DNA from: Octopus bimaculoides
Lineage: Eukaryota
Reading direction: 5' to 3'
DNA: 64,000 nt
Assembly: GCF_001194135.2 (NCBI RefSeq)
Contig: NC_068992.1
Span: 7,235,479-7,299,478, forward strand
Positions 1 to 63,894 of the stretch are shown piece after piece. Each line of letters opens with the position of its first letter. Position 1 is the first letter of the stretch. Both the position numbers and the translations under genes were made by a program. Under the pieces are notes generated by a model that was given only the letters and a program-made list of their open reading frames with translations, made no database searches and was not told where the DNA came from.

Positions 1-348
1 ACATCTTATAGAGTTACTACCTACTCCTTTTCTACATACTGAGCAGGGCCATCTACCTGAAGGGGTTTGTGTTTTATCTACCTTCCTACTTATTAGGATT
101 TTGGTTTTAGCTAGGTTGACTCTAAGGCCCTTCAATTCTAGACCTTGCTTCCACACCTGAAACTTCTCCTCTAGTTCTGATAGTGACTCCGCAATTAGGG
201 CAAGGTCATCAGCATAGAGGAGCTCCCAGGGGCAACCTGTCTTGAACTCCTCTGTGATTGCCTGGAGGACTATGGTAAATAATAGGGGGCTGAGGACGGA
301 ACCTTGGTGGACCCCTACCTCTACCCGGAATTCATTGCTGTACTCATT
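1..348 (-). mobile_element. RTE-clade LINE, reverse transcriptase fragment (5'-truncated, runs off the window)
   Basis: Manual translation of 348->1 is open for 116 codons: NEYSNEFRVEVGVHQGSVLSPLLFTIVLQAITEEFKTGCPWELLYADDLALIAES...KGLRVNLAKTK...WPCSVCRKGVGSNSIRC. It contains the QGSVLSP and YADD RT motifs. Confidence 0.95.
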
Positions 349-1460
349 TATATATAATGATTCTTTATAAGATGTCAAGTTCCAGGCTAATGTAATGGTA
401 TTTATGGCACCAGTTTGTCTATAAGTATTACATAACTTAGATAATTTTATTTAAAAACCTATTCTATTTCATAATAGCAATAATGATCAATGCAGACTGC
501 ATGTTAACAAAGAAATTCAAGTAATATTTTATAAATGTTATTTATATTTTCCTATGAGTGATTTATTGATTTCTGTCTATCGGCCCCACTTTCGAACCTC
601 TTAAGTATGTAACTTGTTCTCGTATTTCTGCTGTGGATGGAGGAGGTCGAACAGCTTAATTGGACTTCTTTAACTGATGCAGACACAATGGGATAACAGA
701 ATAAATACTAAATGGTTGATATGATAAATACTGCTTGTTTATGTTTCATTTCCCCATGCCCACCTCCACCTTACAGAAGATCTTTAGCAGACAACATCAA
801 TAATCTCAAGCCAAAGTGGTACTTGATTTGCTGGAAAAAACAGTAAAATCTTCTCTCAGATAAAAAAAAAATGCACACCTTCCTAAAGCAAAAAGGACCT
901 TGGCTAACAAGAGAGGTTCTATGTTCAAAATAACAATCACTTCCCTCTCAAATCAAACCATACCATCTTGAACAAGGAAATGCGCAGCCTAACAATTTAT
1001 CAATGTGCTAGAAATAGCAGTCAAATAAAACCACAGTTTCAATGTCACCAATTCCAACACTTGAGTTAACAAGAGAGCTTAAAGTAAAATTGGCTGCTGT
1101 TTCTAAGAAGTACAGCAACTCCATAGAGATTCATAAAATTATCTGTCCCAAGTCAATAGTATTAGTAGCTTTTTACAAAATTTCACATTAAAAGTAGATT
1201 CATGAATGATCTTTGAATAAAGTTGATTTCTTCCTTTCCTTTTAGTTTTGCCACTCCCAGCCACTGTAAAAGACAGACATAGATAGGTAGAAGCATTGTT
1301 GTATGCTTTAGAAGTTTGTTTTAGGACCACATGTCTGTTCCTAGTACATAAATTATTACAAGCATGCTTTCTTTAACCTTAGATCAATCAAAGCTATGTG
1401 TGAGAAATTTGTTAATAGAAACTGTGCAGAAGCATAGGTGCATACACATGCTGTACGACA

Positions 1461-7035: not shown

Positions 7036-9787
7036 TGTGTGCACGCATATGCATGCATGTGTACATGTGTGTGTTTCTATCAAAACTATAACCTTGATAT
7101 GTAGGTTTGTAAAATGTTTCAGTATGACGCTGTTACATCATGTTATTTATGAGAAATTTGTATAAGAAATCTGAAGCAATCTTGTAGTAGTACTACTCTA
7201 TAATCATATAATCAATTCAACTGAAGTAACATTATTGCAAACATGAATAACAAACTACAACAAACAAGCTATAACTAAAGAAGCTACATATATATATATA
7301 TCTATATATCTATATATATATATATATATATATCTATATANNNNNNNNNNNNNNNNNNNNNNNNNNNNNNNNNNNNNNNNNNNNNNNNNNNNNNNNNNNN
7401 NNNNNNNNNNNNNNNNNNNNNNNNNNNNNNNNNNNNNNNNNNNNNNNNNNNNNNNNNNNNNNNNNNNNNNNNNNNNNNNNNNNNNNNNNNNNNNNNNNNN
7501 NNNNNNNNNNNNNNNNNNNNNNNNNNNNNNNNTATATATATATATATGCATATATATATGCATATATATAAAGTGTGTGGGTATAAATATGCAAAATATA
7601 TACTCCCAGTCACTTAACATCTCAGAAATAAGCTCCAGCCTAATGAGACAAGTATGTATAGAGTCATACACACACACACACACATCGTCCAACCCATGCC
7701 AGCATGGAAAATGGACATTAAAGGATGATGATAATGATATATACATATACACACACTCACACACATATATGTATATAAAAAGCTGGCTCTCCATTGGTTA
7801 TCACAAGGGTTCCAGTTGATCCAATCAACAGAACAGCCTGCTCATCAAATTAACATGTTTAAGGACACCCAGTACTACTTTTGCAGAGCACAAGTTGGGA
7901 ACTACTGATCTAGGATAGATAGGAAGTATATCAGACCTGCCTGACCCATATCAGCATAGGAGAATCAGTGAATGCAGGTGACAGTGGCAGTGGCATCATC
8001 ATCATCATCATCATCCATGTTGATGATAAGGAACATAATTAATTGAACAACAGTTCTATTAATATAAACTGGTCACTAACTTGCTAATATGAGATCCCCT
8101 ATAATATAAACGGGCCAATGAGAGAGCCTGCATTTGGTTGCTCAACTTACCAGAAGCAGTAGCTAAATCTTTCTCATACTACAGCATGATGTTTTAAACA
8201 GAAATGAGATCCACTGCCAGAGAGACAAAAAAATGGTTAGGCGTGTAGTCAACACTGAGATGCTTTCAATCATTGGTTTGCTTGATCAGGGCTGATCAAC
8301 AACTGCAATGACGATTATGAATCATACTAAGTGTATCCTAGTTTGAGATTTTTGTTAGTAATTTATTGATGCATATATTTAAATGAAACTGTTTGAACAA
8401 CTGAGTTTAAATGTTTTAAAATGTATATAAAAATGGGGTGCTTTTAGCAGAACCCATTCTGTTGCGAGTATTCAGACTAGATCTACAGCGTGAGAGTAAC
8501 TTTTCTATTCTATTTTTTAACCCCCTTACAACACACACACACTTGTCTTTATTAGATTTTTTTCCCATTTCGATTTTGATAACTTTATTTGATAACATGG
8601 CTTATATTCTGAAAGGTCAGGTCATTGACTGAAACTGTGTATTCTAACATAGGCAGAAGACTTTTGATTGAAATAATATCCACACATTGTGTTGCATCAA
8701 GCTTGTATTAACATGATCATCTAACTGTGCAATATGCTTCCATGATCAAAATGGAATATTTTTTTTTAAATTGCTGATTCATCCAGGTCATTTTTCAAAG
8801 ATTAAAAGATAGATTATATCAAAGAAAATTATTCAACAATCAAAATATAAATTTAAAAACAAAATGTGGCAAATAAACAAGGACAAAATAGGAATTGGAT
8901 TCACTTACGGCATTTAAATGCATGTTAAATAAAGTTACTTGCTAAAAAGAAAATTAAATCAAAAGAATTCTGCTTAATACAGAAATTTGCATCACTATGA
9001 TAACATTTTCAGTTTAATTTCATCTAATTATCCTTTTCAAAATAAATTGCTGAAATTGGTTTAGACAAACATGTTGAAAACTAGAACTTATTTATTTAAT
9101 TTGTTTTATTTGGGCAAATAGCATTATTGGTTCTGGCTTTTAATGGACCAATCACTAGTTTACTTGCACTAGCAAGTCTGAAAATGAAGTATCTATAACT
9201 TTGTGTACAACAAATATTGCAAGGGATCTTGTTAAAAAAGGCAATAGTTTTTTTTTTTTTTATTGCTAGTGATTCCATCCATTTCCAATGTATCTCAGTT
9301 CAAGAGATACTTTGTTGAATATACACACACTCACACACACACAACAGCATCAACACAGCTTCCATCCACTGAATTCCACTCGAAGGATGTAGATCAACTC
9401 AAGACACTTGCACATGATGTTGTGCAACAGGATCAAACACAGAATCATGCAGGCACAAAGCAAACGTTTTAATCCCACAACTATTTTAGCTCTCAAGAGA
9501 TATATCAGAAGCAAATATATGTTAAAGCTAAAACAATCCAGAGAAATGAGCAAAGTATATTAGACCCATCTTATACATGACTTTCAGGGCATCTATACAA
9601 TGGAGTATCCAAAAGTAACTTCAAATGTTCTCTATAGGACAAGCCCATTGTAATTCAGGCGTCTGCTTCTAGAAGCCACTTGATGTGACTCTCAGGCATC
9701 AGTCTGCTGACCGGCGTTGTCCAGGGGGGGGGGGGTCATACTGGTCTTTGTTTTGCAGTGCTTCTCCCCTGTTCATTAATTTTTGCA

Positions 9788-11980: not shown

Positions 11981-12361
11981 AATATACAAAATTAAGTAAA
12001 TGACAAGGAAATGAGAATTAAGTAATACTGTTCTTTAGCCATTCAACTTTATATTACACTTTCTTTGTGACTAATGCTTTATTGCATTATTCTGAAACAT
12101 TCACATTGAGTTCCAACACCAGGTTAATAGTATCACTATGCCTAAGCATAAACGTCTAGTTAGAATAGAGGCAGCTGACGAAGGATTAATTCCAAGTGGC
12201 AATCTGTTTTCCTATGTGTTCGTTCCGTGGTCTGTAGTTCATTGTTCTAACGTCCTGTACCCTGATATGCATCTATATACACATGTAGATGTAAGTATGT
12301 ACATATATGTGTGTATACATGCATATATATTCTTTGTATTATATACCTATANNNNNNNNNN

Positions 12362-13254: not shown

Positions 13255-13602
13255 AGGCCTGTGCCCAGCATCGCCTTTCTGGCACTTGTGCCGGTGGCAC
13301 GTGTAAAAACTTTTGAGCGAGATCGTTGCCAGTGCCGCTGGACTGGCTCTTGTGCGGGTGGCACATAAAATACACCATTTTGGAGTATGGCCGTTGCCAG
13401 TACCTCCTGACTGGTCTTCGTGCCGGTGGCACGTAAAAGCACCCACTACACTCTCGGAGTGGTTGGCGTTAAGAAGAGCATCCAGCTGTAGAAACTCTGC
13501 CAAATCAGATTGGAGCCTGGTGTAGCCATCTGGTTCACCAGTCCTCAGTCAAATCGTCCAACCCATGCTAGCATGGAAAGCGGACGTTAAACGATGATGA
13601 TG
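13255..13602 (+). mobile_element. RTE-type 3' tail repeat with triplicated internal unit, ending in (GAT)n
   Basis: Three gtgccggtggcac units, then gcacccactacactctcggagtggttggcg...ccaacccatgctagcatggaaagcggacgttaaacgatgatgatg. The same motif begins the 3' UTR of the RTE at 32115-32137. Confidence 0.85.
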
Positions 13603-14847: not shown

Positions 14848-15068
14848 NNNNNNNNNNNNNNNNNNNNNNNNNNNNNNNNNNNNNNNNNNNNNNNNNNNNN
14901 NNNNNNNNNNNNNNNNNNNNNNNNNNNNNNNNNNNNNNNNNNNNNNNNNNNNNNNNNNNNNNNNNNNNNNNNNNNNNNNNNNNNNNNNNNNNNNNNNNNN
15001 NNNNNNNNNNNNNNNNNNNNNNNNNNNNNNNNNNNNNNNNNNNNNNNNNNNNNNNNNNNNNNNNNNNN

Positions 15069-15135
<67 letters not shown>

Positions 15136-16036
15136 TACATACAAAGACATACACTGCAGAGAAAGAAGAAGAAGAGAGATAAATGTTCTCCTTTTGCAGT
15201 TCTAACACTGTGCTGTTATCTCCTATTCTCTTCGCTATTATTTCATTTACTACACTGACATTTATTGTCTTGCTGAAACATCTATCTTGTCCATTCCCAA
15301 TTCCCAAATTGTTATTATATCATGCTTGATGATAAAACTATATCTTCGGGGTTATTTCATTCACATCATTTTTCACCATTTCCATGGCTGCCACCGCATT
15401 TTATTCTTTTTTTTTTTTTTTTTTTTTTTTNNNNNNNNNNNNNNNNNNNNNNNNNNNNNNNNNNNNNNNNNNNNNNNNNNNNNNNNNNNNNNNNNNNNNN
15501 NNNNNNNNNNNNNNNNNNNNNNNNNNNNNNNNNNNNNNNNNNNNNNNNNNNNNNNNNNNNNNNNNNNNNNNNNNNNNNNNNNNNNNNNNNNNNNNNNNNN
15601 NNNNNNNNNNNNNNNNNNNNNNNNNNNNNNNNNNNNNNNNNNNNNNNNNNNNNNNNNNNNNNNNNNNNNNNNNNNNNNNNNNNNNNNNNNNNNNNNNNNN
15701 NNNNNNNNNNNNNNNNNNNNNNNNNNNNNNNNNNNNNNNNNNNNNNNNNNNNNNNNNNNNNNNNNNNNNNNNNNNNNNNNNNNNNNNNNNNNNNNNNNNN
15801 NNNNNNNNNNNNNNNNNNNNNNNNNNNNNNNNNNNNNNNNNNNNNNNNNNNNNNNNNNNNNNNNNNNNNNNNNNNNNNNNNNNNNNNNNNNNNNNNNNNN
15901 NNNNNNNNNNNNNNNNNNNNNNNNNNNNNNNNNNNNNNNNNNNNNNNNNNNNNNNNNNNNNNNNNNNNNNNNNNNNNNNNNNNNNNNNNNNNNNNNNNNN
16001 NNNNNNNNNNNNNNNNNNNNNNNNNNNNNNNNNNNN

Positions 16037-16975: not shown

Positions 16976-17100
16976 TCACAGGTGGAAGGTACCAGCGGTA
17001 TTATACTCCACATTTTGGCACTCGTGTAAATAACATCACATCATACATTGGAGACACAGCAACACTTTATTGTTCTATAATAAATCTGGGCACAAAAACA
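16976..17100 (+). CDS. Dpr/ZIG-8-like Ig-superfamily protein, exon encoding the first half of Ig domain 1
   Basis: Polypyrimidine tract plus ccAG acceptor (16975) and GTAAGT donor (17101). 125 bp, phase 1->0. Translates (V)TGGRYQRYYTPHFGTRVNNITSYIGDTATLYCSIINLGTKT, matching the Dpr motif PxF...N.T...GxTAxLxCx.xNLGxKT. Not in the ORF track. Confidence 0.92.
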
Positions 17101-17389: not shown

Positions 17390-18050
17390 ATCATCATTAT
17401 TATTATAATTGCCTTTGCACAGCTTCTAACGCTGGAGATGTACTACAGTGTCAGCTGTTCCCTACCAGTGAAATAAGGTAACACCTCTTATTTTTCGAAC
17501 ACCTTTCGGAGTACTCGAGCGGTTCCAAGCAGTGCTGTTTTCTGCAAGTGCTCCACCCTTATTGCAGCCCCTATTTGTTCCATGTCCTTCTCGAGATTTT
17601 TGCTCACTGTTCACGGGGCTCCGCCAATTAGTGGTACTACTGCTACCTTTTTCATCGACCACAACTGCTTAACCTCCCAAGCTAATCTGTCATATCTCTC
17701 GCCTTTTCTTTCTTCCCTATCGCATACCTTGTTGTCAGCTGGGCATGCTATATCTATGATCCAGCATAGTTTGCTTTCTTTCTCAATTAAGACTATGTCT
17801 GACTTCCTGTTCTCTATCTCATGGTCACACTGAATCATANNNNNNNNNNGCTTTCTTTCTCAATTAAGACTATGTCTGACTTCCTGTTCTCTATCTCATG
17901 GTCACACTGAATCATAAAATCCCATAGGATCTTTGCATTTCTATTTTCAACGATGCCTTCAGGTTTGTGGTCATACCAATTTTTTGTTTTGTCAAGTCCA
18001 TACTTGTTGCAGAGTGTCCAATGGACAAGCCTGGCTATATTGTCGTGGCC
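17390..18050 (-). mobile_element. R4/Dong-clade non-LTR retrotransposon, 5'-truncated 3' end with restriction-like endonuclease
   Basis: HDNIARLVHWTLCNKYGL...WYDHKP...ENRNAKILWDFMIQCDHEIENRKSDIV...IIDIACPAD...KY/RY..L..EVKQLW...LQKTALLGTARVLRKVFEK* (stop 17488-17490), then an (AAT)n tail. 17772-17839 is duplicated at 17850-17917 across a 10-N gap. Confidence 0.9.
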
Positions 18051-22272: not shown

Positions 22273-22304
<32 letters not shown>

Positions 22305-22309
<5 letters not shown>

Positions 22310-22534
22310 TCTTTTACTTGTTTCAGTCTTTTGACTGTGGCCATGCTGGAGCACCGCCTTTTAGTCGAGCAAATCGACCCCAGGACTTATTCTTTAGAAG
22401 CCTAGTACTTATTCTATCGATCTCTTTTGCCGAACCGCTAAATTACGGGGACATAAACACACCAGCATCGGTTGTCAAGCGATGTTGGGGGGACAAACAC
22501 ACACATACAAACATACACACACACATACATATAT
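22305..22534 (-). mobile_element. tRNA-head SINE family A, young 3' half (runs into gap)
   Basis: Near-identical reverse complement of 49060-49250. Confidence 0.9.
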
Positions 22535-22658
22535 NNNNNNNNNNNNNNNNNNNNNNNNNNNNNNNNNNNNNNNNNNNNNNNNNNNNNNNNNNNNNNNNNN
22601 NNNNNNNNNNNNNNNNNNNNNNNNNNNNNNNNNNNNNNNNNNNNNNNNNNNNNNNNNN

Positions 22659-23212: not shown

Positions 23213-24614
23213 TTTTGCTTATGCATAATGAATCCACATTTCTTAAAGTAGGGACTATCTTGTTGTTATAATCTTTCCAAACATCTTAAAATAATAACTA
23301 TTATGAAAATATATTTCCCAGAAACAGGTTGCCTTACAAACATTATCATCTTCATCTTGAAATTCCAGTGTATCAGAAAGGTGTCAAAGCAATTAAAAAA
23401 TGAGAAAAGCTCAATTTTTAAAATTACATTGGCTTTAGTAACATATTTCTGTGCCTTGGGTCTTTAAAGAGTGTTCAACTGGAATTAGTCTCCTCTTTAG
23501 AAAAACCATTGTGTAAAGCATGTTTATGTAATTGTTAAAGTTAAGGAAGTAAGCTGTTAATAAAATCAAATGTACAAATTATTTTTTGAAATGGTTGTCA
23601 AATTACAAAATGAGAAAATAAACTTATAGGAAAATATTTGGTAAGTGAAAATTAAAAAATACAAGATAAAATTTCCAAACAGAAAAAAATGAATCTGATG
23701 GGTTGGTGAATGTTGTACAGAGTGGTTTTTGTGTATACAAATTATACAACAGAAATACATACATACATACACATACACATCAGAAAGGAAGTATGAAGAT
23801 ACGTGTAAAAGTATTTATATGTAGACATAACTTTAGAAGTTATCAAAAGTGGCCCACTTAAATGGTCTGACACAACAACTTAGATCATTTCAAAGCTATT
23901 ACTACATCATATTCGATGATGTAAATATTTCAAGCTACATAAAAATTCATTCATATAAATCTTTTATACATTTATATATATCTATGTGTTTGTATGCATG
24001 TGTATATGTGTGTGTATGTATATATGTGCATATATATAATACATATACGGATATATTTATATACGAGTTTATATATANNNNNNNNNNNNNNNNNNNNNNN
24101 NNNNNNNNNNNNNNNNNNNNNNNNNNNNNNNNNNNNNNNNNNNNNNNNNNNNNNNNNNNNNNNNNNNNNNNNNNNNNNNNNNNNNNNNNNNNNNNNNNNN
24201 NNNNNNNNNNNNNNNNNNNNNNNNNNNNNNNNNNNNNNNNNNNNNNNNNNNNNNNNNNNNNNNNNNNNNNNNNNNNNNNNNNNNNNNNNNNNNNNNNNNN
24301 NNNNNNNNNNNNNNNNNNNNNNNNNNNNNNNNNNNNNNNNNNNNNNNNNNNNNNNNNNNNNNNNNNNNNNNNNNNNNNNNNNNNNNNNNNNNNNNNNNNN
24401 NNNNNNNNNNNNNNNNNNNNNNNNNNNNNNNNNNNNNNNNNNNNNNNNNNNNNNNNNNNNNNNNNNNNNNNNNNNNNNNNNNNNNNNNNNNNNNNNNNNN
24501 NNNNNNNNNNNNNNNNNNNNNNNNNNNNNNNNNNNNNNNNNNNNNNNNNNNNNNNNNNNNNNNNNNNNNNNNNNNNNNNNNNNNNNNNNNNNNNNNNNNN
24601 NNNNNNNNNNNNNN

Positions 24615-28399: not shown

Positions 28400-29075
28400 T
28401 TCTTTTTCTTCATACTGCATTCAACCAATCAAAAAGCATAGTCTAGAGAGTTCATTGGTACCCAATAAGAGACAAAAACCTTCCCTCTTCATCATTCTTG
28501 GTCATCAGCTAATTCCAGGTTTTCTACCATCTCACTTCCTGTCCATTTCTTCTTGGTGATTCTCAATCACCCTGTTTGGGGTTTACCTAGAACTCTTTTT
28601 TTCCAAGATTTGTCCAAACATAACCAAATATGCAAGAAGCAGAATATCATGAGGTCATATAACATAACAAACCAACTGGCTCTTCTCCTCGGGGCCAGAA
28701 GACACTTCAACTCTCCCAAAAATTATCGATACTCTGTAAAGTTCAGATATGGCCCTTACTGGAAAATTGCTCTCATTTCTGGGATGGTGCTGCTATACAG
28801 AGACATCATAGTCTATATCCAGAAAGGGTTATCCTACTAACTGACATAAAGTTACTCAAGGACACAATCCATCTTTGGCTCTCACCTCTCTTTGCCTTTT
28901 CTACTGTTACTATAATGGCCTCTGTTTCTTTGAACTGGCTGCATCTATGCCACCTCCCCTCAAGTATTCTTGTATCACTAATCTCTCCTCTTCTCATCAT
29001 CCTTGTTATGCTCAAAGTGCAATCACTATGCCCATCCCTTCCTTCCTAGAGCTTCACCCCCACCCCTGCTGCTAA
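28400..29075 (-). pseudogene. Highly degenerate RTE LINE ORF 3' region
   Basis: Minus-strand fragments: RILEGRW...F...KAKRG...CV...MSVS(GSETW-like)...ELY...LG...RRRASWF..V..., followed by an RGRP-like region. Pattern matches the RTE C-terminus. Confidence 0.55.
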
Positions 29076-29145
29076 AAAAAAAAAGAAAACACTTCATTTT
29101 CCATCTTTTTATAATTTTTCATCATTTTTTATCTTTTCTGTCCAG

Positions 29146-29356
29146 GTGGTATGGCGGAAAACATCAAGTAGACATCCAATCACCGTAGGAACATTTACAT
29201 TTATCAGTGATAAAAGTTATTCTATTCAACGCCAAATTGAAAAAAATGAATGGAACCTTGTAATAAAAAATGTTCAGCCAAAACATGCAGGTCTCTATGA
29301 ATGCCATATATCAAGTAAAGAAAAACAAAAGTTTAATGTATATTTAAATGTTATAG
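29146..29356 (+). CDS. Dpr/ZIG-8-like Ig-superfamily protein, exon encoding the second half of Ig domain 1
   Basis: Long polypyrimidine tract plus tccAG (29145) and G|GTAAGT donor (29357). 211 bp, phase 0->1. Translates VVWRKTSSRHPITVGTFTFISDKSYSIQRQIEKNEWNLVIKNVQPKHAGLYECHISSKEKQKFNVYLNVI, with the Ig Trp, WxLxIxxVxxxxAGxYEC and LNV. Splices in frame to 16976-17100. Confidence 0.95.
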
Positions 29357-29889
29357 GTAAGTAGATGTTCCAATTCTACTTATTTTCATTTAAATTTGTA
29401 ACTATTATTATTATTGTTACTGTTGTTGTTGTTGTTGTTGTTGTTATTAACATTATTGTTATTACCATTATTATTATCATCATCATCATCATTATTATTA
29501 TTATTATTATTGTTGTTGTTGTTGTTTTTTTATATATTGCTGTTATTTCAATTGTGACAAAATATTCATTTTTATACAGTTATATCCTTCAGAATAAGAA
29601 TTTTTTTTAAAAATTTAGATATTACAGATCTAGATGTACTATTATGTATAATAAGTGTATATATATATGTAAATATGTATATTATATATGTACAATATGG
29701 TGTTATTAAGTAAACATGTGCTCACTAAGCCACTGTTAATGAAAGTCTATATGAGGTTGTCACAGTATATATGTACAATGCATATACACATTCATATACA
29801 TAAAGATAAAGATATCTATATACAATTTATTCATATACATGATATATGTATATTATATATCATAATGAATATGTGATATATATATATAT

Positions 29890-30180: not shown

Positions 30181-30789
30181 CAGATAGATAGATAGATAGA
30201 TAGATACATTTCTTTTATTAGCCACACAGGGCTCAACGAAGATGGGACAAATACAATGTAGAGCTTTTCTTTTTGGGAGGGGGAAGGAAGGAAAAAAAAA
30301 AAAAAAAAANNNNNNNNNNNNNNNNNNNNNNNNNNNNNNNNNNNNNNNNNNNNNNNNNNNNNNNNNNNNNNNNNNNNNNNNNNNNNNNNNNNNNNNNNNN
30401 NNNNNNNNNNNNNNNNNNNNNNNNNNNNNNNNNNNNNNNNNNNNNNNNNNNNNNNNNNNNNNNNNNNNNNNNNNNNNNNNNNNNNNNNNNNNNNNNNNNN
30501 NNNNNNNNNNNNNNNNNNNNNNTTCATAGGGTTATGCTCAAGATGGTTCCGTCGTTCACACGTGCCATCCTTGCTACATTCACCCATTTTTTTTTGAAGC
30601 ATTCACTAGACAAGACTTCCCTTTCTACTCTCAACTTCCTCTTCAGGTGATACTTGAAGAAGTTGATGAGAGATTGCCCAGAGAGGAAAGTCTTTGTCTC
30701 TAGACCTTTCAGATGCGTCCACCATACACATTCTTTCGCCATAGCCACAAGTACGATGAAAATAGCTCTTCCTTCCCGTTTAAAGGAAG
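30181..30789 (-). mobile_element. Tx1/L1-like LINE 3' end, 5'-truncated, interrupted by a gap
   Basis: ORF 30785->30524: FKREGRAIFIVLVAMAKECVWWTHLKGLETKTFLSGQSLINFFKYHLKRKLRVEREVLSSECFKKKWVNVARM...ITL*, resembling Tx1 ORF2 C-termini (AK..IW..R...L..ER...F...W). AATAAA on the minus strand at 30214-30219 precedes a (TATC)n tail. Confidence 0.65.
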
Positions 30790-32137: not shown

Positions 32138-32769
32138 NNNNNNNNNNNNNNNNNNNNNNNNNNNNNNNNNNNNNNNNNNNNNNNNNNNNNNNNNNNNNNN
32201 NNNNNNNNNNNNNNNNNNNNNNNNNNNNNNNNNNNNNNNNNNNNNNNNNNNNNNNNNNNNNNNNNNNNNNNNNNNNNNNNNNNNNNNNNNNNNNNNNNNN
32301 NNNNNNNNNNNNNNNNNNNNNNNNNNNNNNNNNNNNNNNNNNNNNNNNNNNNNNNNNNNNNNNNNNNNNNNNNNNNNNNNNNNNNNNNNNNNNNNNNNNN
32401 NNNNNNNNNNNNNNNNNNNNNNNNNNNNNNNNNNNNNNNNNNNNNNNNNNNNNNNNNNNNNNNNNNNNNNNNNNNNNNNNNNNNNNNNNNNNNNNNNNNN
32501 NNNNNNNNNNNNNNNNNNNNNNNNNNNNNNNNNNNNNNNTATATATATATATATATGAAGTTTTTCAAAAGGAAAACAAACATTTTTAAAATGCAAATTT
32601 ATTGATTTGCATACAACTTAATTAGACTTATCTCCTTCACCATAGTCCCATCTGTTATTTTTCCAGTTTTGCAACACCAGCTGTAACATATTTTCAAGTT
32701 AATGTGTTGCAGTTCTCATGATGAATCTTTCTTTGTTCTTTTCTGTTATCAGAAATCAGTAACCTTTCA

Positions 32770-35970: not shown

Positions 35971-36837
35971 CGGGATGCAGTGAATATATTGTCTAAATTA
36001 AGCAGAAATGAAAATAACACTGTCATCTCATTTTAACAGATATATTTACCAAAATTACATAAAAATATCTTGAAATACTAAAGAGTAAATTTATTCAATA
36101 AAACCGTCATTGGTTTCAACCACGGCTTCCAGACGACTTCAGAATCTCCTGCAACTCTTCTGGATGGTCTCCTTGTTTAAGTTGGTAAATGCTGCCATAA
36201 TCCTTGCCTTCAGTTCATCTTTGGTGTTACAAGGAGTTTTGTTGATCTCACACTCAACTGTGCCCCACATATAATAATCAAGGGGGTTGCAGTTTGGGGA
36301 GTTAGGTGGCCAGTTGTTAGGGGTGATGTGGTGACAGAAATTGTCTGACAGCCATGACTGGGTTCTCCTGCTTGTGTGGAATGGTGCAGAGTCCTGTTGC
36401 CAGACATAGGGTCTTTCAGCAGCCACCCTCTTGACCCAGGGCAGCACTACCTCCTCCAGGAACTTAATATAAGCCTGAAGCCATGTCAGAAGATGAATGG
36501 AGCCAAAACGTTGCCATCACTAGTGATCACTCCAAACACCATGATGTTGACTGGATGTTTGATTTTTATCACTCTCAATACATATTTTGGGGAAACAGCA
36601 AGCCAATGGTTATTCTGTGTGCTCACCATTTGTTCATATTGGAGCTTCTGGTATGAACACCAAGCAGTACAGCATTTTTTTTCCAAATTTCTGGTTAAGT
36701 GAATTGCATCATACTGCTGTTTTTCTCACACACGATGCCCAACTGACCCTACTATATTGTGTAGTCAACAAAAACAAAGAATGCACATGCGCAAAATTAA
36801 GAATATAAAATGGTGACAATTTACCCATCACACCCTG
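35971..36837 (-). mobile_element. maT (DD37D) Tc1/mariner-superfamily transposon, internally deleted and decayed
   Basis: QNNHWLA...KHPVNIMVFGVITSDG...LPWVKRVAAERPYVWQQDSAP...WPPNSPNCNPLDY, with 37 residues counted between the QQD and NPLD aspartates. TA-flanked 23-bp TIRs match 15/23 (cgggatgcagtgaatatattgtc vs cagggtgtgatgggtaaattgtc). Confidence 0.9.
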
Positions 36838-40056: not shown

Positions 40057-40214
40057 GAGTGGTTGGCGTTAGGAAGGGCATCCAGCTGTAGAAACTCTGC
40101 CAAATCAGACTGGAGCCTGGTGTTGCCATCCGGTTTCACCAGTCCTCAGTCAAATCGTCCAACCCATGCTAGCATGGAAAGCGGATGTTAAACGATGATG
40201 ATGATGATGATGAT
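40057..40214 (+). mobile_element. RTE-type 3' tail repeat, young, ending in (GAT)n
   Basis: Near-identical to 13452-13601. Confidence 0.9.
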
Positions 40215-48804: not shown

Positions 48805-48961
48805 AATGGCTGTGTGGTAAGTAGCTTGCTTACCAACCACATGGTTCCGGGTTCATTCCTACTGTGTGGCACCTTGGGCAAGTATCTTCTACTATAGCCT
48901 CCGGCCGACCAAAGCCTTGTGAGTGGATTTGTTAGACAGAAACTGAAAGAAGCCCGTCGTA

Positions 48962-49026
<65 letters not shown>

Positions 49027-49253
49027 ATGTATGTGTGTGTATATGAATGTGTGTCTGTGTTTGTCCCCCCAATATCGCTTGACAACCGATGCTGGTGTGT
49101 TTACGTCCCCGTAACGTAGCGGTTCGGCAAAAGAGACCGATAGAATAAGTACTAGGCTTACAAAGAATAAGTCTTGGGGTCGATTTGCTCGACTAAAGGC
49201 GGTGCTCCAGTATGGCCACAGTCAAATGACTGAAACAAGTAAAGGAGTAAGAG
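48805..49253 (+). mobile_element. tRNA-head SINE family A, full-length young copy (reference copy in this window)
   Basis: A-box-like tggctgtgtggtaag, B-box-like ggttcattcc/ggttcagtcc, central (TA)n(TG)n microsatellite, and conserved tail ending gactgaaacaagtaaaggagtaagag. Confidence 0.92.
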
Positions 49254-59900: not shown

Positions 59901-60879
59901 ATATCTCTCACTCACTGATATTTCTTACATTTTGCTTTCTCTCTTACACACACACACACACATACACACACTCTTTCTCTCGCTTTTTCTCTCCTCCCAC
60001 TCAACTATGCATTGCAATCAAATGTACAGTATAGAGTTAGTGATGTAGTTGTGATATGTAATCTGAATGAATTGGGAATAGAATTTGTGATTGTATATGT
60101 TTGTTGCTTGGATAAGACTATTGGCACATATCACTTGTACTGCTTTCATATGCTAGCATGAAAAAAAAACAGTTTTTTATCCCCTCGGGTGTCTCGCAGC
60201 CACTAAAGAAAGACATGGAAGGTGATTAACAGATGTTATTACCAAGACATCTTACTTGCAATCTAAAGACACAATTTTGGCTGACATAATAATAAAAATA
60301 ATAATAATAATAATTTCTTTACAAAGACTGAAGAATACAATTAAATCAAACCAATCACTTGACTTGCCCTTTCTTTTACCAACTACAGTAGTATTAATGA
60401 TTTTTAGCATAAAACTTTTCTCAAACATAATGAAAATAATAATATACCCTTCAGATTTAAAATATTTGCTTCTGAAGAACTCTTTTAAGTGAAAGCAAAG
60501 ATTACTTTGTAAAGGCATTAGAAATATGTCATAAATATATGCTCTGTGATGGTTATAATGTATAATTTGCATTAAAACTTCTATGGATTTTGGTTTCTTT
60601 GAATATTTGGTCAAGTAATATAAATACTTTTAACATGCACACACACACACACACTTTAAGGTTTCACCAACAGCAGGTCATCAGATAGTTTGATGAGCCA
60701 CTTTGAGGGAATTGTCTCCCTGCATTTTATTTGAATAATGTATGTATGTACGTATGTATGAGTGCATATATGTATGTATAATTGTGTGCATGTGTGTGTG
60801 TGTGTGTTTAAAAATTTGCTCTACAATCATTGGCCCCAGGTTGTTTTCCAGAAGGATGATCTAGGAACAAAATCACCCT

Positions 60880-61453
60880 ATTTAGAAATAATACATTTCT
60901 AAATCTCTCGGAGAGATTTATGCAGTAGTGATATGATGAAGTAGTTCTATGCTGTCAACTTAATGTGACAGTCCCTTGAAGGGAATAATACTACTGTTGG
61001 TTAGACCTAGGAAGCTGCACCGCTTCCTGTCAGCCTTGACAAATTTCCTGTGTCCTTATGTTTACAAGGGGACTGTCACATTAAGTTGACAGCATACAAC
61101 TACTTCATCGTATCACTACTGCATAAATCTCTCTGAGAGATTTAGAAATGTATTATTTCTAAATTTGAAATCAGTGAATGTATTTCACTTGAATTATTAT
61201 ATGTTTACAAGAGCTTGACAGGCATCTTCGACTAGCAGGTCATGCTACTCCAGACTGATTACGAGCAAAGACTCAGAAACATGTCTCTGGATGCAGGCTT
61301 AGCTGGGTGGAGGTGCTTGTCACCCCTTGTAAACATAAGGACACAGGAAATGTGTCAAGGCCGACAGGAAGCGGTGCAGCTTCCTAGGTCTAACCAACAG
61401 TAGTATTATTCCCTTCAGAGGACTGTCACATTAAGTTAACAGCATACAACTAC
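60880..61453 (+). mobile_element. Retrozyme/Penelope-pLTR-like element: 350-nt unit bounded by a direct repeat plus an inverted upstream duplicate
   Basis: 60880-60975 vs 61069-61164: inverted, 96 bp, 3 mismatches. 60941-61071 vs 61323-61453: inverted, about 6 mismatches. 61070-61103 vs 61420-61453: direct, 34 nt, 1 mismatch, period 350. Confidence 0.6.
61250..61290 (+). ncRNA. Type I hammerhead ribozyme-like motif with variant/decayed core
   Basis: Stem I CCAGA/UCUGG; core CUGAUUA (canonical CUGANGA); stem II GAG-caaaga-CUC; GAAAC; minimal stem III with palindrome ACAUGU; GUC cleavage triplet at 61283-61285. Confidence 0.6.
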
Positions 61454-63894
61454 AAAATCGCCATAGTTTAAACTTCTAATAAAAAAGATATTAAACTCTC
61501 TTGTATTTTGTATTGAGTACTACACATCAAAATAGTCCACTTTGATTGAACTAATTTTCTGAAGTGAACACATGAAATTACTCTTTCTCTCTCTTTCTTT
61601 CTCTCTTTCTCTCTCTCACACACACTCACAAACATTGAGTTAACAAGCAAAAGAAATAATTCTTAATGTATGTTGTAGAATATATTTATTTGTACAAAAC
61701 TGGTGATACACTTTGTTACCACTTAGCGATTTTTACTCCATGCAATTCCTCAGGCTACAACAAAAATTGTTATCGCCTGGGGTATCATCACATTGAAACC
61801 ATGATTAGCAGCAAAGGGAATCACCAGTTTCTTATACATGTGTGTATGTGTCTGCATGCAAGCACGTTTATGTGTGTTTGTATGTGTTAATGATGACTAT
61901 GTTATCAATGAGATTTGTGTTTCTAAAATTTGATTTTCAATGTTTTTAATAATTTTTTCAAGTGGTAGAACTATAGATGGTAGAACTGATGAAGCACCAG
62001 CCAAGATGCTGTGTGATATTTAGCTATATCTCTTAATTCAAACCAACCCAGGAATTTGATGAAATCAAATTTCTGTATCGATGAGATAAGTAACAGGGTT
62101 GATGTAATTGTGTGTCATTTTGTCTTTGGTTATGCTTATGTTAAGATTTCTTTGATATTTTAAATATTTTAAATATTGTTATGATTTTACGAAGTCTGTT
62201 CTGATTTACTGATAAAAAGTTTGCAATGTGGATGATTTTTGTGTACATCTCACTTTAAATTTGCATGAATAAATTTGTCATTTAGAAAGACGTAATCTTT
62301 TTTTTTTCAACTATATTATCAAATCTTCTACATTGTGCTCCTTGTGTCAGTCAGTCATATTTTGAAGGGTTAACTTTGCCTTCTATCCTTCTAGTGTTGA
62401 TAAGATAAGAATAAGTCAGGCACTAAAATTGACTAAATTAAACACAAATAAAATACCCAGGATATTGTTCATCTTTAAATTTGTGTTCCATACTATAAGT
62501 AATATAATATGCAGTTACTGTTCCTAAAGACTAACTAAAGCAGTTGTTTAAATTTTAGTCTGTTCTCAATAGGTACTAAACTCTACTGAATTTATGTGTC
62601 TCCTCACTCCCACAAAAAAAGGAATTATCATATATCTCTAATGTTGATTAATATTATCTGTATTAAGAATTCAATATATAAGGAAGAAATACCTTATTTG
62701 AAAAGTGCATCTTTCAAAAATAAATATTATTTAAAATCAAAGACATATATGACATTCATTCCGATTTGGTATAAAGAATGGAATACTTTGACAATGAAAA
62801 ACAATGCTATATGTTAATTTTCTAATATTAAATTTTACATTTTATTCTTAGATACTTATTTTTATCTCTTATTACCTTCAATATATCATTAAAAAAAAAA
62901 AAAAAGAAGTACGCCAAAGTTTCATATTCTGTAATTTAGAAATTTACCATATTTTCTTAGTAGTTCTTTACAGAACTAATTAGATTTAAATGAAAATCTG
63001 TTCCTAATGTATGCACAATTTCACACACACACACACACACACATTACCTATTTCCATGTTGGTATGGAAAAACTGATATGAAAGGAAAACAAATGAATAT
63101 ATAAATAAGTATATACATATATACAAATGTACATAGTTACATATTGCAGTAATTTTCACCTCAATAATAATGTATAGAGTTGCCTCAGTAAACATAAGTG
63201 AAAGTTTTTGTAGAACAAAAATCTTTTATAGCAAATCAGATTGAAAGTCATATTTTTTTGTTTTACATACATGAACAGAACATTACTAAATATTCATTAG
63301 ATTTTCTAAAACTTGTGTCTGTTCATAAACCAAAAGTAATAACAAACTAAAATATACCATGTTTTTGCTTCACTGTATGACATCTGGCAAAGAAAATACA
63401 AGGAACCAAGAGGAAATCTATTCTAATACGATGCAAGATTAACACTTGAACAGGTTTCTCACAAGCAAACAAGAAGACCTCTGTATGGTCACTCAAACTG
63501 TTAGAAATAGTTACCAAATCTCCTTCAGATTGTATCCCCTTAATGTACTACACAAAAATAAATACATTTTTTTTCATTCTTTATAACAACCAAACTTAAT
63601 GATACCTACAAACTCATTTAAGCTCTTTTTATTACTACTGTTGCCAATATAGACTTTTGACTGTTTTCTCATATTATGGATTTTTCCCAAATATTCAAAA
63701 TACTGTGTAATAATGCAGCAAACTGGCAGAACTGATGGCACATCATACAAAATGTTCAAATTCTAGTGTTGACTTTCATGCTTCCAGGCTCAATGAAATA
63801 AGAATCAGTCAAATACTAGGGTTGATATAATGACTTGTCTCATCCCTCAAAACTGTTGGCTTCGTGCCCAAATTAGAAAGAATTATTATTTTTA

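What the first reader, a model, noticed from the sequence alone, without database searches (positions are those of the whole stretch)
61200..61337. Hammerhead-like three-way junction at the tip of a ~55-bp G.U-rich rod
Seen: 61200-61254 pairs almost continuously with 61286-61337 (12-bp perfect base tatgtttacaag/cttgtaaacata). My manual alignment shows about seven G.U pairs versus about one A.C, a strand asymmetry expected from selection on RNA rather than a decaying DNA palindrome. The apex is CCAGA-CUGAUUA-cGAGcaaagaCUCa-GAAAC-AU-GUC-UCUGG. Established: PLE-associated minimal type I hammerheads have palindromic stem III (here ACAUGU) and cleave as dimers. Deviations are U at position 8 and a C.A at the base of stem II, so it is either a decayed copy or a variant core.
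Basis: partly seen in the sequence, partly recalled or inferred. Interest (0 to 1): 0.85.

Follow-up and report, generated by a model that had tools for sequence, protein, structure and literature searches.

The report
Decayed hammerhead ribozyme in octopus retroelement
The hairpin is real and its tip looks like a small self-cleaving hammerhead ribozyme of the kind carried by Penelope-like retroelements. It sits in a 571-bp retroelement insertion in an octopus-like genome, and this copy lacks an essential catalytic base, so it is most likely an ordinary dead fossil.

Summary
61200-61337 folds on the + strand into a ~55-bp rod (-61.9 kcal/mol, z -6.9; minus strand -45.6) with 6-7 G.U pairs and no A.C. 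The apex 61255-61285 reads CUGAUUA-C-GAG(CAAAGA)CUC-A-GAAA-CAUG-UC, in register with the closing helix.

A relaxed type I hammerhead descriptor hits only this site in the window. An anchored match at a hairpin tip is expected about 2-6e-6 of the time.

The rod lies inside one insertion (60880-61453) bounded by an 11/13 target-site duplication. The insertion holds an inverted 5'-truncated copy, a direct partial copy and the ribozyme-bearing copy. This is the characteristic layout of Penelope-like element (PLE) or retrozyme insertions, and octopus genomes carry PLEs.

Against an active ribozyme:
- G8 is U.
- An extra A separates C11.1 from G12.
- Helix II is only 3 bp.
- No Rfam hammerhead model scores, even at E<=10.
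- Only one motif copy is present, although helix III (palindrome ACAUGU) needs a dimer.

No other copy could be retrieved, so the family consensus is unknown.

Verdict: probably a decayed member of a known kind. Interest is modest.

The parts
60867..60879 (.). Left target-site duplication, ACAAAATCACCCT
   Evidence: It matches 61452-61464 at 11/13 positions, exactly at the ends of the repeat homology. Chance in this window is 0.004.
60880..61071 (-). Inverted 5'-truncated copy of the element's 3' part. Read on the minus strand it is Z'Y'X' (X 60880-60940, Y 60941-60975, Z 60976-61071).
   Evidence: Inverted repeats I1 (131 nt, 95%) and I2 (96 nt, 97%); alignments.
61067..61071 (.). Head-to-head junction between the inverted copy and the direct copy, with GGG(G) microhomology
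   Evidence: Overlapping ends of I1, I2 and D2; alignments.
61069..61164 (+). Direct partial copy Y'X'. It ends at the same nucleotide (…TTTCTAAAT) as the inverted copy.
   Evidence: 3 mismatches in 96 against the inverted copy.
61165..61199 (+). 35-nt segment S between X' and the rod. It is either the 5' part of the next tandem unit or the truncation point of the third copy. It contains a small hairpin, AGTGAA/TTCACT.
   Evidence: Sequence; fold of the reconstructed unit.
61200..61254 (+). Left arm of the rod; its last 5 nt, CCAGA, are the 5' strand of helix I
61255..61261 (+). Core box CUGAUUA (C3 U4 G5 A6 U7 U8 A9). Position 8 (61260) is U where G is required.
   Evidence: Sequence; descriptor hit.
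61262..61275 (+). Unpaired C (61262), helix II GAG/CUC with loop CAAAGA (61263-61274), and an extra A (61275) before G12
   Evidence: Sequence; MFE helix.
61276..61285 (+). G12 A13 A14 (61276-61278), the palindrome ACAUGU that forms helix III only in a dimer (61279-61284), and C17 (61285). The predicted scissile bond is 61285|61286.
   Evidence: Sequence. Cofolding two copies gives a double hammerhead with a 6-bp helix III: -21.4 against 2 x -8.1 kcal/mol.
61286..61337 (+). Right arm of the rod; its first 5 nt, UCUGG, are the 3' strand of helix I
61323..61453 (+). Z' (61323-61418) and Y' (61419-61453) of the ribozyme-bearing copy. It ends in the AC-rich ACAGCATACAACTAC and lacks X'.
   Evidence: I1 and D2.
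61452..61464 (.). Right target-site duplication, ACAAAATCGCCAT

Best explanation
Positions 60880-61453 are a single old insertion of a non-coding retroelement. The element was mobilised by the machinery of Penelope-like elements (PLEs). It is either a short retrozyme-like unit of about 350 nt or the 5'-truncated 3' end of a longer PLE. The host genome is octopod-like.

The element's + strand RNA carries a type I 'minimal' hammerhead. Its helix I is prolonged into a ~55-bp rod, and its helix III is only the palindrome ACAUGU. The ribozyme can therefore assemble only when two copies pair, giving a double hammerhead as in multimeric transcripts. It would then cut after C61285.

Inferred insertion mechanism:
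- Both DNA ends of a staggered break primed reverse transcription at internal sites of the RNA. One site is the Y'|X' boundary and the other is the end of X', 61 nt apart.
- This gave an inverted 5'-truncated copy on the left and a sense copy on the right.
- The copies were joined at a GGG microhomology and flanked by a 13-bp duplication.

This particular copy is most likely catalytically dead. It has U instead of G at position 8 and an extra A between C11.1 and G12, and there is no second hammerhead in the locus.

What is shown: the rod, the strand asymmetry, the motif in register, the three partial copies and the target-site duplication.
What is inferred: ribozyme ancestry, PLE mobilisation and loss of activity.
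For: Structure and strand:
- The rod folds far better on the + strand, with 6-7 G.U pairs and 0 A.C.
- The same strand is the sense strand implied by the nested 5'-truncated copies. Two of the three end at the end of X'; the ribozyme-bearing copy ends 61 nt upstream, at Y'|X'.

Motif statistics:
- The relaxed hammerhead descriptor gives one hit in 128 kb of strand, at the rod tip.
- The anchored chance is 2-6e-6.

Features not demanded by the descriptor also fit the family:
- U7 and C17.
- G10.1-C11.1.
- An unpaired nucleotide between 9 and 10.1.
- The palindrome 15.1-16.1. These features are listed in PMC4209133.
- The same GAAAC-palindrome-GUC format appears in coral and mussel retrozyme constructs.

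Dimer:
- The dimer fold is predicted.

Insertion anatomy:
- The target-site duplication matches 11/13, p about 0.004.
- An inverted 5'-truncated copy next to a partial tandem, near (TG)n/(CA)n microsatellites, matches the PLE insertion anatomy described in PMC8557442.
- Initiation on both strands at two internal sites is described in PMC11167929.

Host:
- The window is octopod-like. Its repeats are 91-93% identical to O. bimaculoides.
- Octopus genomes contain many Penelope families (PMC13282606, PMC8967140).
Against: - No Rfam hammerhead model matches at any threshold tried.
- G8 is missing, and the spacing between 11.1 and 12 is wrong.
- Helix II is 3 bp, whereas PLE min-HHRs usually have 6-8 bp.
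- A 55-bp extension of helix I is not described for PLE hammerheads.
- No RT/GIY-YIG ORF lies in the insertion, and no PLE sequence could be compared.
- No second copy of the rod is available. Searches of the window, viral contigs, metagenome contigs, prokaryote genome contigs and translated protein libraries all found nothing.
- Conservation and covariation are therefore untested.
Confidence: 0.68

Rival explanations
1. The resemblance is chance. The rod is an internal inverted repeat of some repeat element, and its 31-nt tip happens to resemble a hammerhead without ever having been one.
For: - A relaxed hammerhead-like string occurs 0.54 times per shuffled window.
- The essential G8 is absent and the 11.1|12 spacing is off.
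- Rfam models are silent.
- The motif was picked by eye, which inflates significance.
- No family consensus is available.
Against: - A match in register with the closing helix is expected only 2-6e-6 of the time per hairpin.
- Unrequested family traits also fit: the palindromic ACAUGU, G10.1-C11.1, the bulge after A9, U7 and C17.
- The host insertion has the anatomy of the one retroelement class known to carry such motifs.
Confidence: 0.17
2. The motif is an active variant hammerhead. Its core tolerates U8 and the extra A, perhaps with protein help, and it still processes element RNA as a dimer.
For: - PLE hammerheads are weak in vitro and can be protein-assisted (PMC4209133, PMC11167929).
- A natural core covariation, U3-A8, exists (PMC4209133).
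- The G.U-rich rod suggests the RNA structure was maintained.
Against: - C3 with U8 cannot form the C3-G8 pair.
- Single G8C or C3G changes abolish cleavage in a PLE hammerhead (PMC11167929).
- An insertion next to the general base G12 is not known in active hammerheads (established mutational knowledge).
- The copies in this insertion differ by 3-5%, so one or two post-insertion hits in the core are plausible.
Confidence: 0.05
3. The long hairpin matters as double-stranded RNA. It would serve as a small-RNA precursor or an ADAR editing substrate in a neuronal transcript, and the hammerhead-like tip is incidental. This reading does not exclude a retroelement origin.
For: - The hairpin is a ~55-bp near-continuous duplex on the + strand.
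- That is the strand of the Ig-domain exons at about 17.0 and 29.3 kb.
- Cephalopods edit RNA heavily (general knowledge).
Against: - No microRNA or other Rfam family matches.
- No further exon lies downstream in the window, so transcription through the site is unproven.
- The hairpin is clearly part of a transposon insertion bounded by a target-site duplication.
Confidence: 0.07
4. The hairpin is a DNA-level palindrome of a foldback or MITE-type DNA transposon that is simply decaying.
For: The locus is full of inverted repeats.
Against: - The two ends of the insertion bounded by the duplication (ATTTAGAAAT… and …CATACAACTAC) are not inverted repeats of each other.
- The copies form a nested 5'-truncated series. 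Two end at the same nucleotide and the third ends 61 nt upstream.
- All 6-7 transition differences between the rod arms keep pairing on one strand only.
Confidence: 0.03

Closest known systems
Minimal type I hammerheads of Penelope-like elements (Cervera & de la Pena 2014, PMC4209133; the PAc element of Anolis, PMC11167929)
   Same: - Type I topology with helix I of 5-6 bp.
- An unpaired nucleotide between A9 and G10.1, and a G10.1-C11.1 pair.
- A helix III reduced to a palindrome that needs a dimer.
- The motif lies about 170-230 nt upstream of the apparent reverse-transcription start sites, the same order as in PAc.
- The insertion has an inverted truncated copy, a partial tandem and a duplication.
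   Different: - U8 instead of G8.
- An extra A before G12.
- Helix II is 3 bp rather than 6-8 bp.
- Helix I continues into a 55-bp rod.
- No RT/GIY-YIG ORF is attached.
Metazoan non-LTR retrozymes (Cervera & de la Pena 2020, PMC7229834; Li et al. 2026 preprint, 10.64898/2026.07.22.740005)
   Same: - It is non-coding.
- The inferred unit of about 350 nt lies in the 170-400 nt range.
- The hammerhead has the GAAAC-palindrome-GUC format.
- The predicted RNA is highly self-paired (z -6.8).
- It shows PLE-type mobilisation.
   Different: - Only 1.1 direct units and a single hammerhead are present, not a tandem array with a ribozyme in every unit.
- The X'|S junction could be a template switch rather than a true tandem junction.
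- There is no circular RNA evidence.
- The papers read here do not mention cephalopods.
Double-hammerhead satellites (newt satellite 2, Schistosoma Sm-alpha), covered by Rfam Hammerhead_1
   Same: A weak helix III, activity expected only as dimers in multimeric transcripts, and residence in repetitive DNA.
   Different: The Rfam type I model does not score this sequence at all. The core is mutated.

Membership tests
Hammerhead ribozyme, catalytic core | Conserved C3 U4 G5 A6 N7 G8 A9 on the 5' side | tested here: not met
   61255-61261 reads CUGAUUA. Six of the seven positions fit, but the essential G8 is U.
Hammerhead ribozyme, catalytic core | G12 A13 A14 directly after C11.1, the A15.1-U16.1 pair, and H17 at the cleavage site | tested here: inconclusive
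   GAAA (61276-61279), U16.1 (61284) and C17 (61285) are present. One extra A (61275) lies between C11.1 and G12.
Hammerhead ribozyme, three-way junction | Helices I, II and III around the core in type I order | tested here: met
   The descriptor hit has helix I of 6 bp and helix II of 3 bp. Helix III forms only in the dimer, as 6 bp.
Rfam hammerhead families (Rfam release 15) | Covariance-model score at or above the gathering threshold | tested here: not met
   No hit at gathering. No hit at E<=10 on 901 nt or on 71 nt.
Hammerhead ribozyme | Site-specific self-cleavage giving 2',3'-cyclic phosphate and 5'-OH ends | not testable with these tools
   This needs in vitro transcription and end mapping.
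PLE minimal hammerhead (PMC4209133) | A nucleotide between 9 and 10.1, G10.1-C11.1, and palindromic 15.2-16.2/loop 3 | tested here: met
   C61262 is unpaired, G61263 pairs with C61274, and ACAUGU (61279-61284) is self-complementary.
PLE minimal hammerhead (PMC4209133) | A long helix II (6-8 bp) and family-wide covariation | tested here: not met
   Helix II is 3 bp. Covariation could not be tested because no other copy was found.
Penelope-like element insertion | An inverted 5'-truncated copy next to a partial tandem, variable internal RT start sites or 'tail', a target duplication, and microsatellite or AT-rich targets (PMC8557442, PMC11167929) | tested here: met
   Three nested copies; two termini 61 nt apart; an 11/13 duplication; (TG)n and (CA)n within 100 nt.
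Penelope-like element (autonomous) | An RT plus GIY-YIG ORF between pseudo-LTRs | tested here: not met
   The duplication-bounded insertion is about 571 bp. Its longest ORF is 53 aa, with no relatives.
Non-LTR retrozyme | Tandem units of about 170-400 bp, each with a type I hammerhead, with at least 2 complete ribozymes for activity | tested here: inconclusive
   The direct spacing of Y' is 350 nt (D2), but only 1.1 units and one hammerhead-like motif are present.
Non-LTR retrozyme | Expressed circular RNA of unit length | not testable with these tools
   No transcriptome data are available.

The most novel reading that the evidence does not exclude
The copy represents a cephalopod family of retrozyme-like RNAs. 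In this family the hammerhead caps an unusually long, G.U-maintained double-stranded rod. The rod makes the RNA a dedicated dsRNA substrate for ADAR or Dicer, or the altered core (U8, extra A) is a working, protein-assisted variant rather than decay.
Probability: 0.06. Interest if true: 0.65.

Novelty: new member of a known kind. Interest (0 to 1): 0.3.

Why it matters
If the reading is right, this is one more fossil of the very large population of hammerhead-bearing PLE or retrozyme sequences in animal genomes, here in an octopod. The papers read here do not describe such motifs in cephalopods.

The locus is a compact example of PLE insertion anatomy. It shows priming on both strands, two internal start sites, a microhomology junction and a target duplication.

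It would matter more if the family turns out to be expressed, or if the long rod is conserved. Long perfect dsRNA is notable in an animal that edits RNA heavily. This single mutated copy does not open a new question by itself.

Tried and rejected
Searches that found nothing relevant:
- Rfam at gathering and at E<=10 on 901 nt and 71 nt found no hammerhead, only noise.
- ARAGORN found no tRNA-like part.
- Self-BLAST of 60800-61520 against the window found no further copy of the rod.
- Exact or degenerate pattern scans for the conserved Z 30-33-mers and for the apex found 0 hits. These covered viral contigs, metagenome contigs (cap exhausted) and prokaryote genome contigs.
- Translation trick: ORF 61236-61403 against the 5.8-billion protein set found no candidates.
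- phmmer of that ORF against 1.84 billion representatives gave only weak multi-stretch hits. The two I checked in Pfam were Myb-repeat and zinc-finger proteins, judged spurious.
- The Ig-exon query, meant to reach the orthologous locus, returned only a 46% mussel hit.
- A 20-kb O. bimaculoides slice (L001) shares SINE-like repeats with the window but not this element.
- Pfam on six-frame DNA references failed because of stop codons. I then dropped it as unnecessary, because the duplication bounds the insertion.
- Supplements of the key PLE papers are not held as text.

Readings rejected:
- MITE or foldback element: the insertion ends are not inverted repeats of each other.
- tRNA-SINE: no tRNA-like part.
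- Real protein ORF: no homologues.

Full report
**1. What the window is.**

The 64-kb window is eukaryotic. It is 32% G+C, has nine runs of N and is rich in CA/TA microsatellites.

It carries the following features:
- a LINE reverse-transcriptase fragment at 1-450(-) (RVT_1, E 1.8e-15). The best named relatives are in Octopus and Hydractinia at 64-66% identity.
- a DDE_3 transposase remnant at 36142-36516(-).
- one V-set Ig exon at 29050-29361(+).

SINE-like repeats in the window are 91-93% identical to a slice of the O. bimaculoides chromosome CM046604.1. The source is therefore an octopod or a close relative.

**2. The observation.**

The described hairpin exists.
- RNA of the + strand of 61200-61337 folds to -61.9 kcal/mol (z -6.9). 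The minus strand reaches only -45.6 (z -3.5).
- The MFE has a perfect 12-bp base and 6 G.U pairs. A seventh, G61230.U61308, is possible. No A.C is opposed.
- Every transition difference between the arms keeps pairing on the + strand only. That has probability about 0.008-0.016 if a DNA palindrome were decaying symmetrically.

**3. Is the tip hammerhead-like beyond chance?**

I wrote an RNAmotif-style descriptor for type I hammerheads.
- The canonical form (CUGANGA) has no hit in the window.
- A relaxed form allows any base at positions 7 and 8, and 0-1 extra nucleotide on either side of helix II. It has exactly one hit on both strands, 61255-61285(+).
- Such a relaxed hit anywhere is not remarkable: 0.54 per dinucleotide-shuffled window. 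It becomes 0.02 per window if helix III must be palindromic and helix I at least 5 bp.
- For a given hairpin, the chance that its 25-45-nt tip satisfies the descriptor in register with the closing helix is 2-6e-6.

Several traits not required by the descriptor also fit:
- U7 and C17.
- G10.1-C11.1.
- One unpaired nucleotide between A9 and G10.1.
- A self-complementary 15.1-16.1 stretch, ACAUGU.

Cervera & de la Pena give the last three as hallmarks of PLE min-HHRs (PMC4209133). Coral and mussel retrozyme constructs show the same GAAAC-palindrome-GUC format (PMC7229834 supplement).

A monomer cannot close helix III, because the loop would be 2 nt. Cofolding two copies yields the classical double hammerhead with a 6-bp helix III, at -21.4 against 2 x -8.1 kcal/mol.

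**4. What speaks against a working ribozyme.**

- Position 8 is U. C3-G8 is required, and G8C or C3G alone abolishes cleavage of a PLE hammerhead (PMC11167929).
- An extra A (61275) separates C11.1 from G12.
- Helix II is only 3 bp.
- No Rfam hammerhead model reports the site, even at E<=10 on a 71-nt slice.
- The locus has only one motif, although the architecture needs two.

**5. The surroundings change the picture.**

The rod is part of a composite of three partial copies of one sequence. I label the segments of that sequence X, Y and Z as read on the + strand at 60880-61071, and X', Y' and Z' for the same segments in the opposite, RNA-sense orientation. The order along the RNA is Z'-Y'-X'. 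S is the 35-nt segment between X' and the rod.
- 60880-61071 is the reverse complement of Z'Y'X' (192 nt).
- 61069-61164 is Y'X' in + orientation (96 nt).
- 61165-61453 is S, the rod with the motif, Z' and Y' in + orientation.

The copies are 95-97% identical. The inverted and the first direct copy end at the same nucleotide (…TTTCTAAAT) and start at different points. They meet head-to-head at a GGG(G) microhomology.

The whole block is bounded by ACAAAATCACCCT (60867-60879) and ACAAAATCGCCAT (61452-61464). This 11/13 match has p about 0.004 in this window.

It is therefore one insertion of about 571 bp, made of nested 5'-truncated cDNA-like pieces in both orientations. It has no terminal inverted repeats at its borders and no ORF. 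The longest ORF is 53 aa and has no relatives.

This matches the published anatomy of PLE insertions: an inverted 5'-truncated copy beside a partial tandem, an optional tail, and a microsatellite bias (PMC8557442). It also fits the in vitro finding that a PLE protein cuts and extends both DNA strands and starts reverse transcription at two internal RNA sites (PMC11167929).

Here the two apparent start sites are the AC-rich end of Y' and the end of X', 61 nt apart. They lie 168 and 229 nt downstream of the predicted cleavage site. That is the same order as in the Anolis element.

Three independent features point to + as the RNA strand: the truncation series, the G.U bias and the hammerhead orientation.

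**6. Unit or fragment?**

The direct part reads Y'X'-S-rod-Z'Y', so Y' recurs after 350 nt (D2).

If X'|S is contiguous in the template, the element is a 350-nt tandem unit, in the size range of metazoan retrozymes. A unit rebuilt from the pieces folds to -118.7 kcal/mol (z -6.8). In that fold the rod closes a multibranch of small hairpins and the hammerhead sits at the other end.

If X'|S is a template switch, the pieces are simply three truncated 3' ends of a longer PLE.

One locus cannot decide between these.

**7. Age and decay.**

The copies differ by 3-5% and the duplication by 2 of 13. I estimate from this that one or two hits in the 31-nt apex since insertion are plausible though not certain. 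The two core defects may be private to this copy or inherited from its master.

**8. Comparative evidence could not be obtained.**

All the following were empty or irrelevant:
- self-BLAST;
- pattern scans of viral, metagenome and prokaryotic collections;
- translated searches;
- an attempt to reach the orthologous locus through the Ig exon.

Conservation of the core and covariation of the helices remain the decisive untested points.

**9. Verdict.**

The hammerhead interpretation is partly supported. The most likely reading (about 0.68) is a decayed, inactive copy of a dimer-dependent type I hammerhead inside a PLE-mobilised non-coding retroelement in an octopod genome.

The rivals are:
- a chance look-alike (about 0.17);
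- an active variant core (about 0.05);
- a dsRNA or small-RNA role (about 0.07, not exclusive);
- a DNA foldback element (about 0.03).

It is a new member of a known kind, of modest interest.

Noticed in passing
window 1-450 (-): A fragment of a non-LTR (LINE) reverse transcriptase runs off the window start. RVT_1 scores E 1.8e-15. The best named relatives are uncharacterised proteins of Octopus bimaculoides, O. sinensis and Hydractinia at 64-66% identity.
   Followed up: partly
window 29050-29361 (+) and about 16990-17090 (+): A V-set/I-set immunoglobulin domain appears to be split by a ~12-kb intron. The second exon hits Pfam V-set (E 1.4e-6); the first half was read by eye only and has no Pfam hit. 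The only protein-database relative is a 46% identical mussel Ig protein, so the gene seems absent from the protein database searched. No further Ig exon lies downstream in the window.
   Followed up: partly
window 36142-36725 (-): Remnant of a Tc1/mariner-type DDE transposase (Pfam DDE_3, E 4.6e-4, below the curated cut-off).
   Followed up: partly
window 13265-13602, 22304-22525, 40057-40206, 48820-49250: SINE-like repeats are 91-93% identical to sequences in a 20-kb slice of O. bimaculoides chromosome CM046604.1 (L001). This is the basis for calling the window octopod-like.
   Followed up: partly
window 60880-60920 and 61124-61164: The terminal segment X consists of two near-perfect small palindromes, ATTTAGAAAT-AATAC-ATTTCTAAAT and TAAATCTCTC-GG-AGAGATTTA. 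The element's 3' end is therefore itself a pair of hairpins, possibly a recognition site for the reverse transcriptase.
   Followed up: no
window 61008-61027 and 61367-61386: A 7-bp stem, AGGAAGC-TGCACC-GCTTCCT, lies inside a 54-nt stretch that is identical in both copies of segment Z. This is the best-conserved part of the element.
   Followed up: no
window 61242-61403 (+): A 53-codon ATG ORF starts 13 nt upstream of the hammerhead-like core and runs through it. This recalls the Anolis PLE, whose ORF starts inside the ribozyme. No homologue was found, so it is probably fortuitous.
   Followed up: yes
window 60638-60656, 60730-60812, 61575-61635: (CA)n, (TATG)n/(TG)n and (CT)n/(CA)n microsatellites flank the insertion within about 100-250 nt. 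This fits the microsatellite and AT-rich target bias reported for PLEs.
   Followed up: no
window 7341-7532, 12352-12361, 14848-15068, 15431-16036, 17840-17849, 22535-22658, 24078-24614, 30310-30522, 32138-32539: Nine assembly gaps (runs of N, 10-606 nt) indicate a scaffolded short-read assembly. The long 'ORFs' listed around them are artefacts of N translation.
   Followed up: yes
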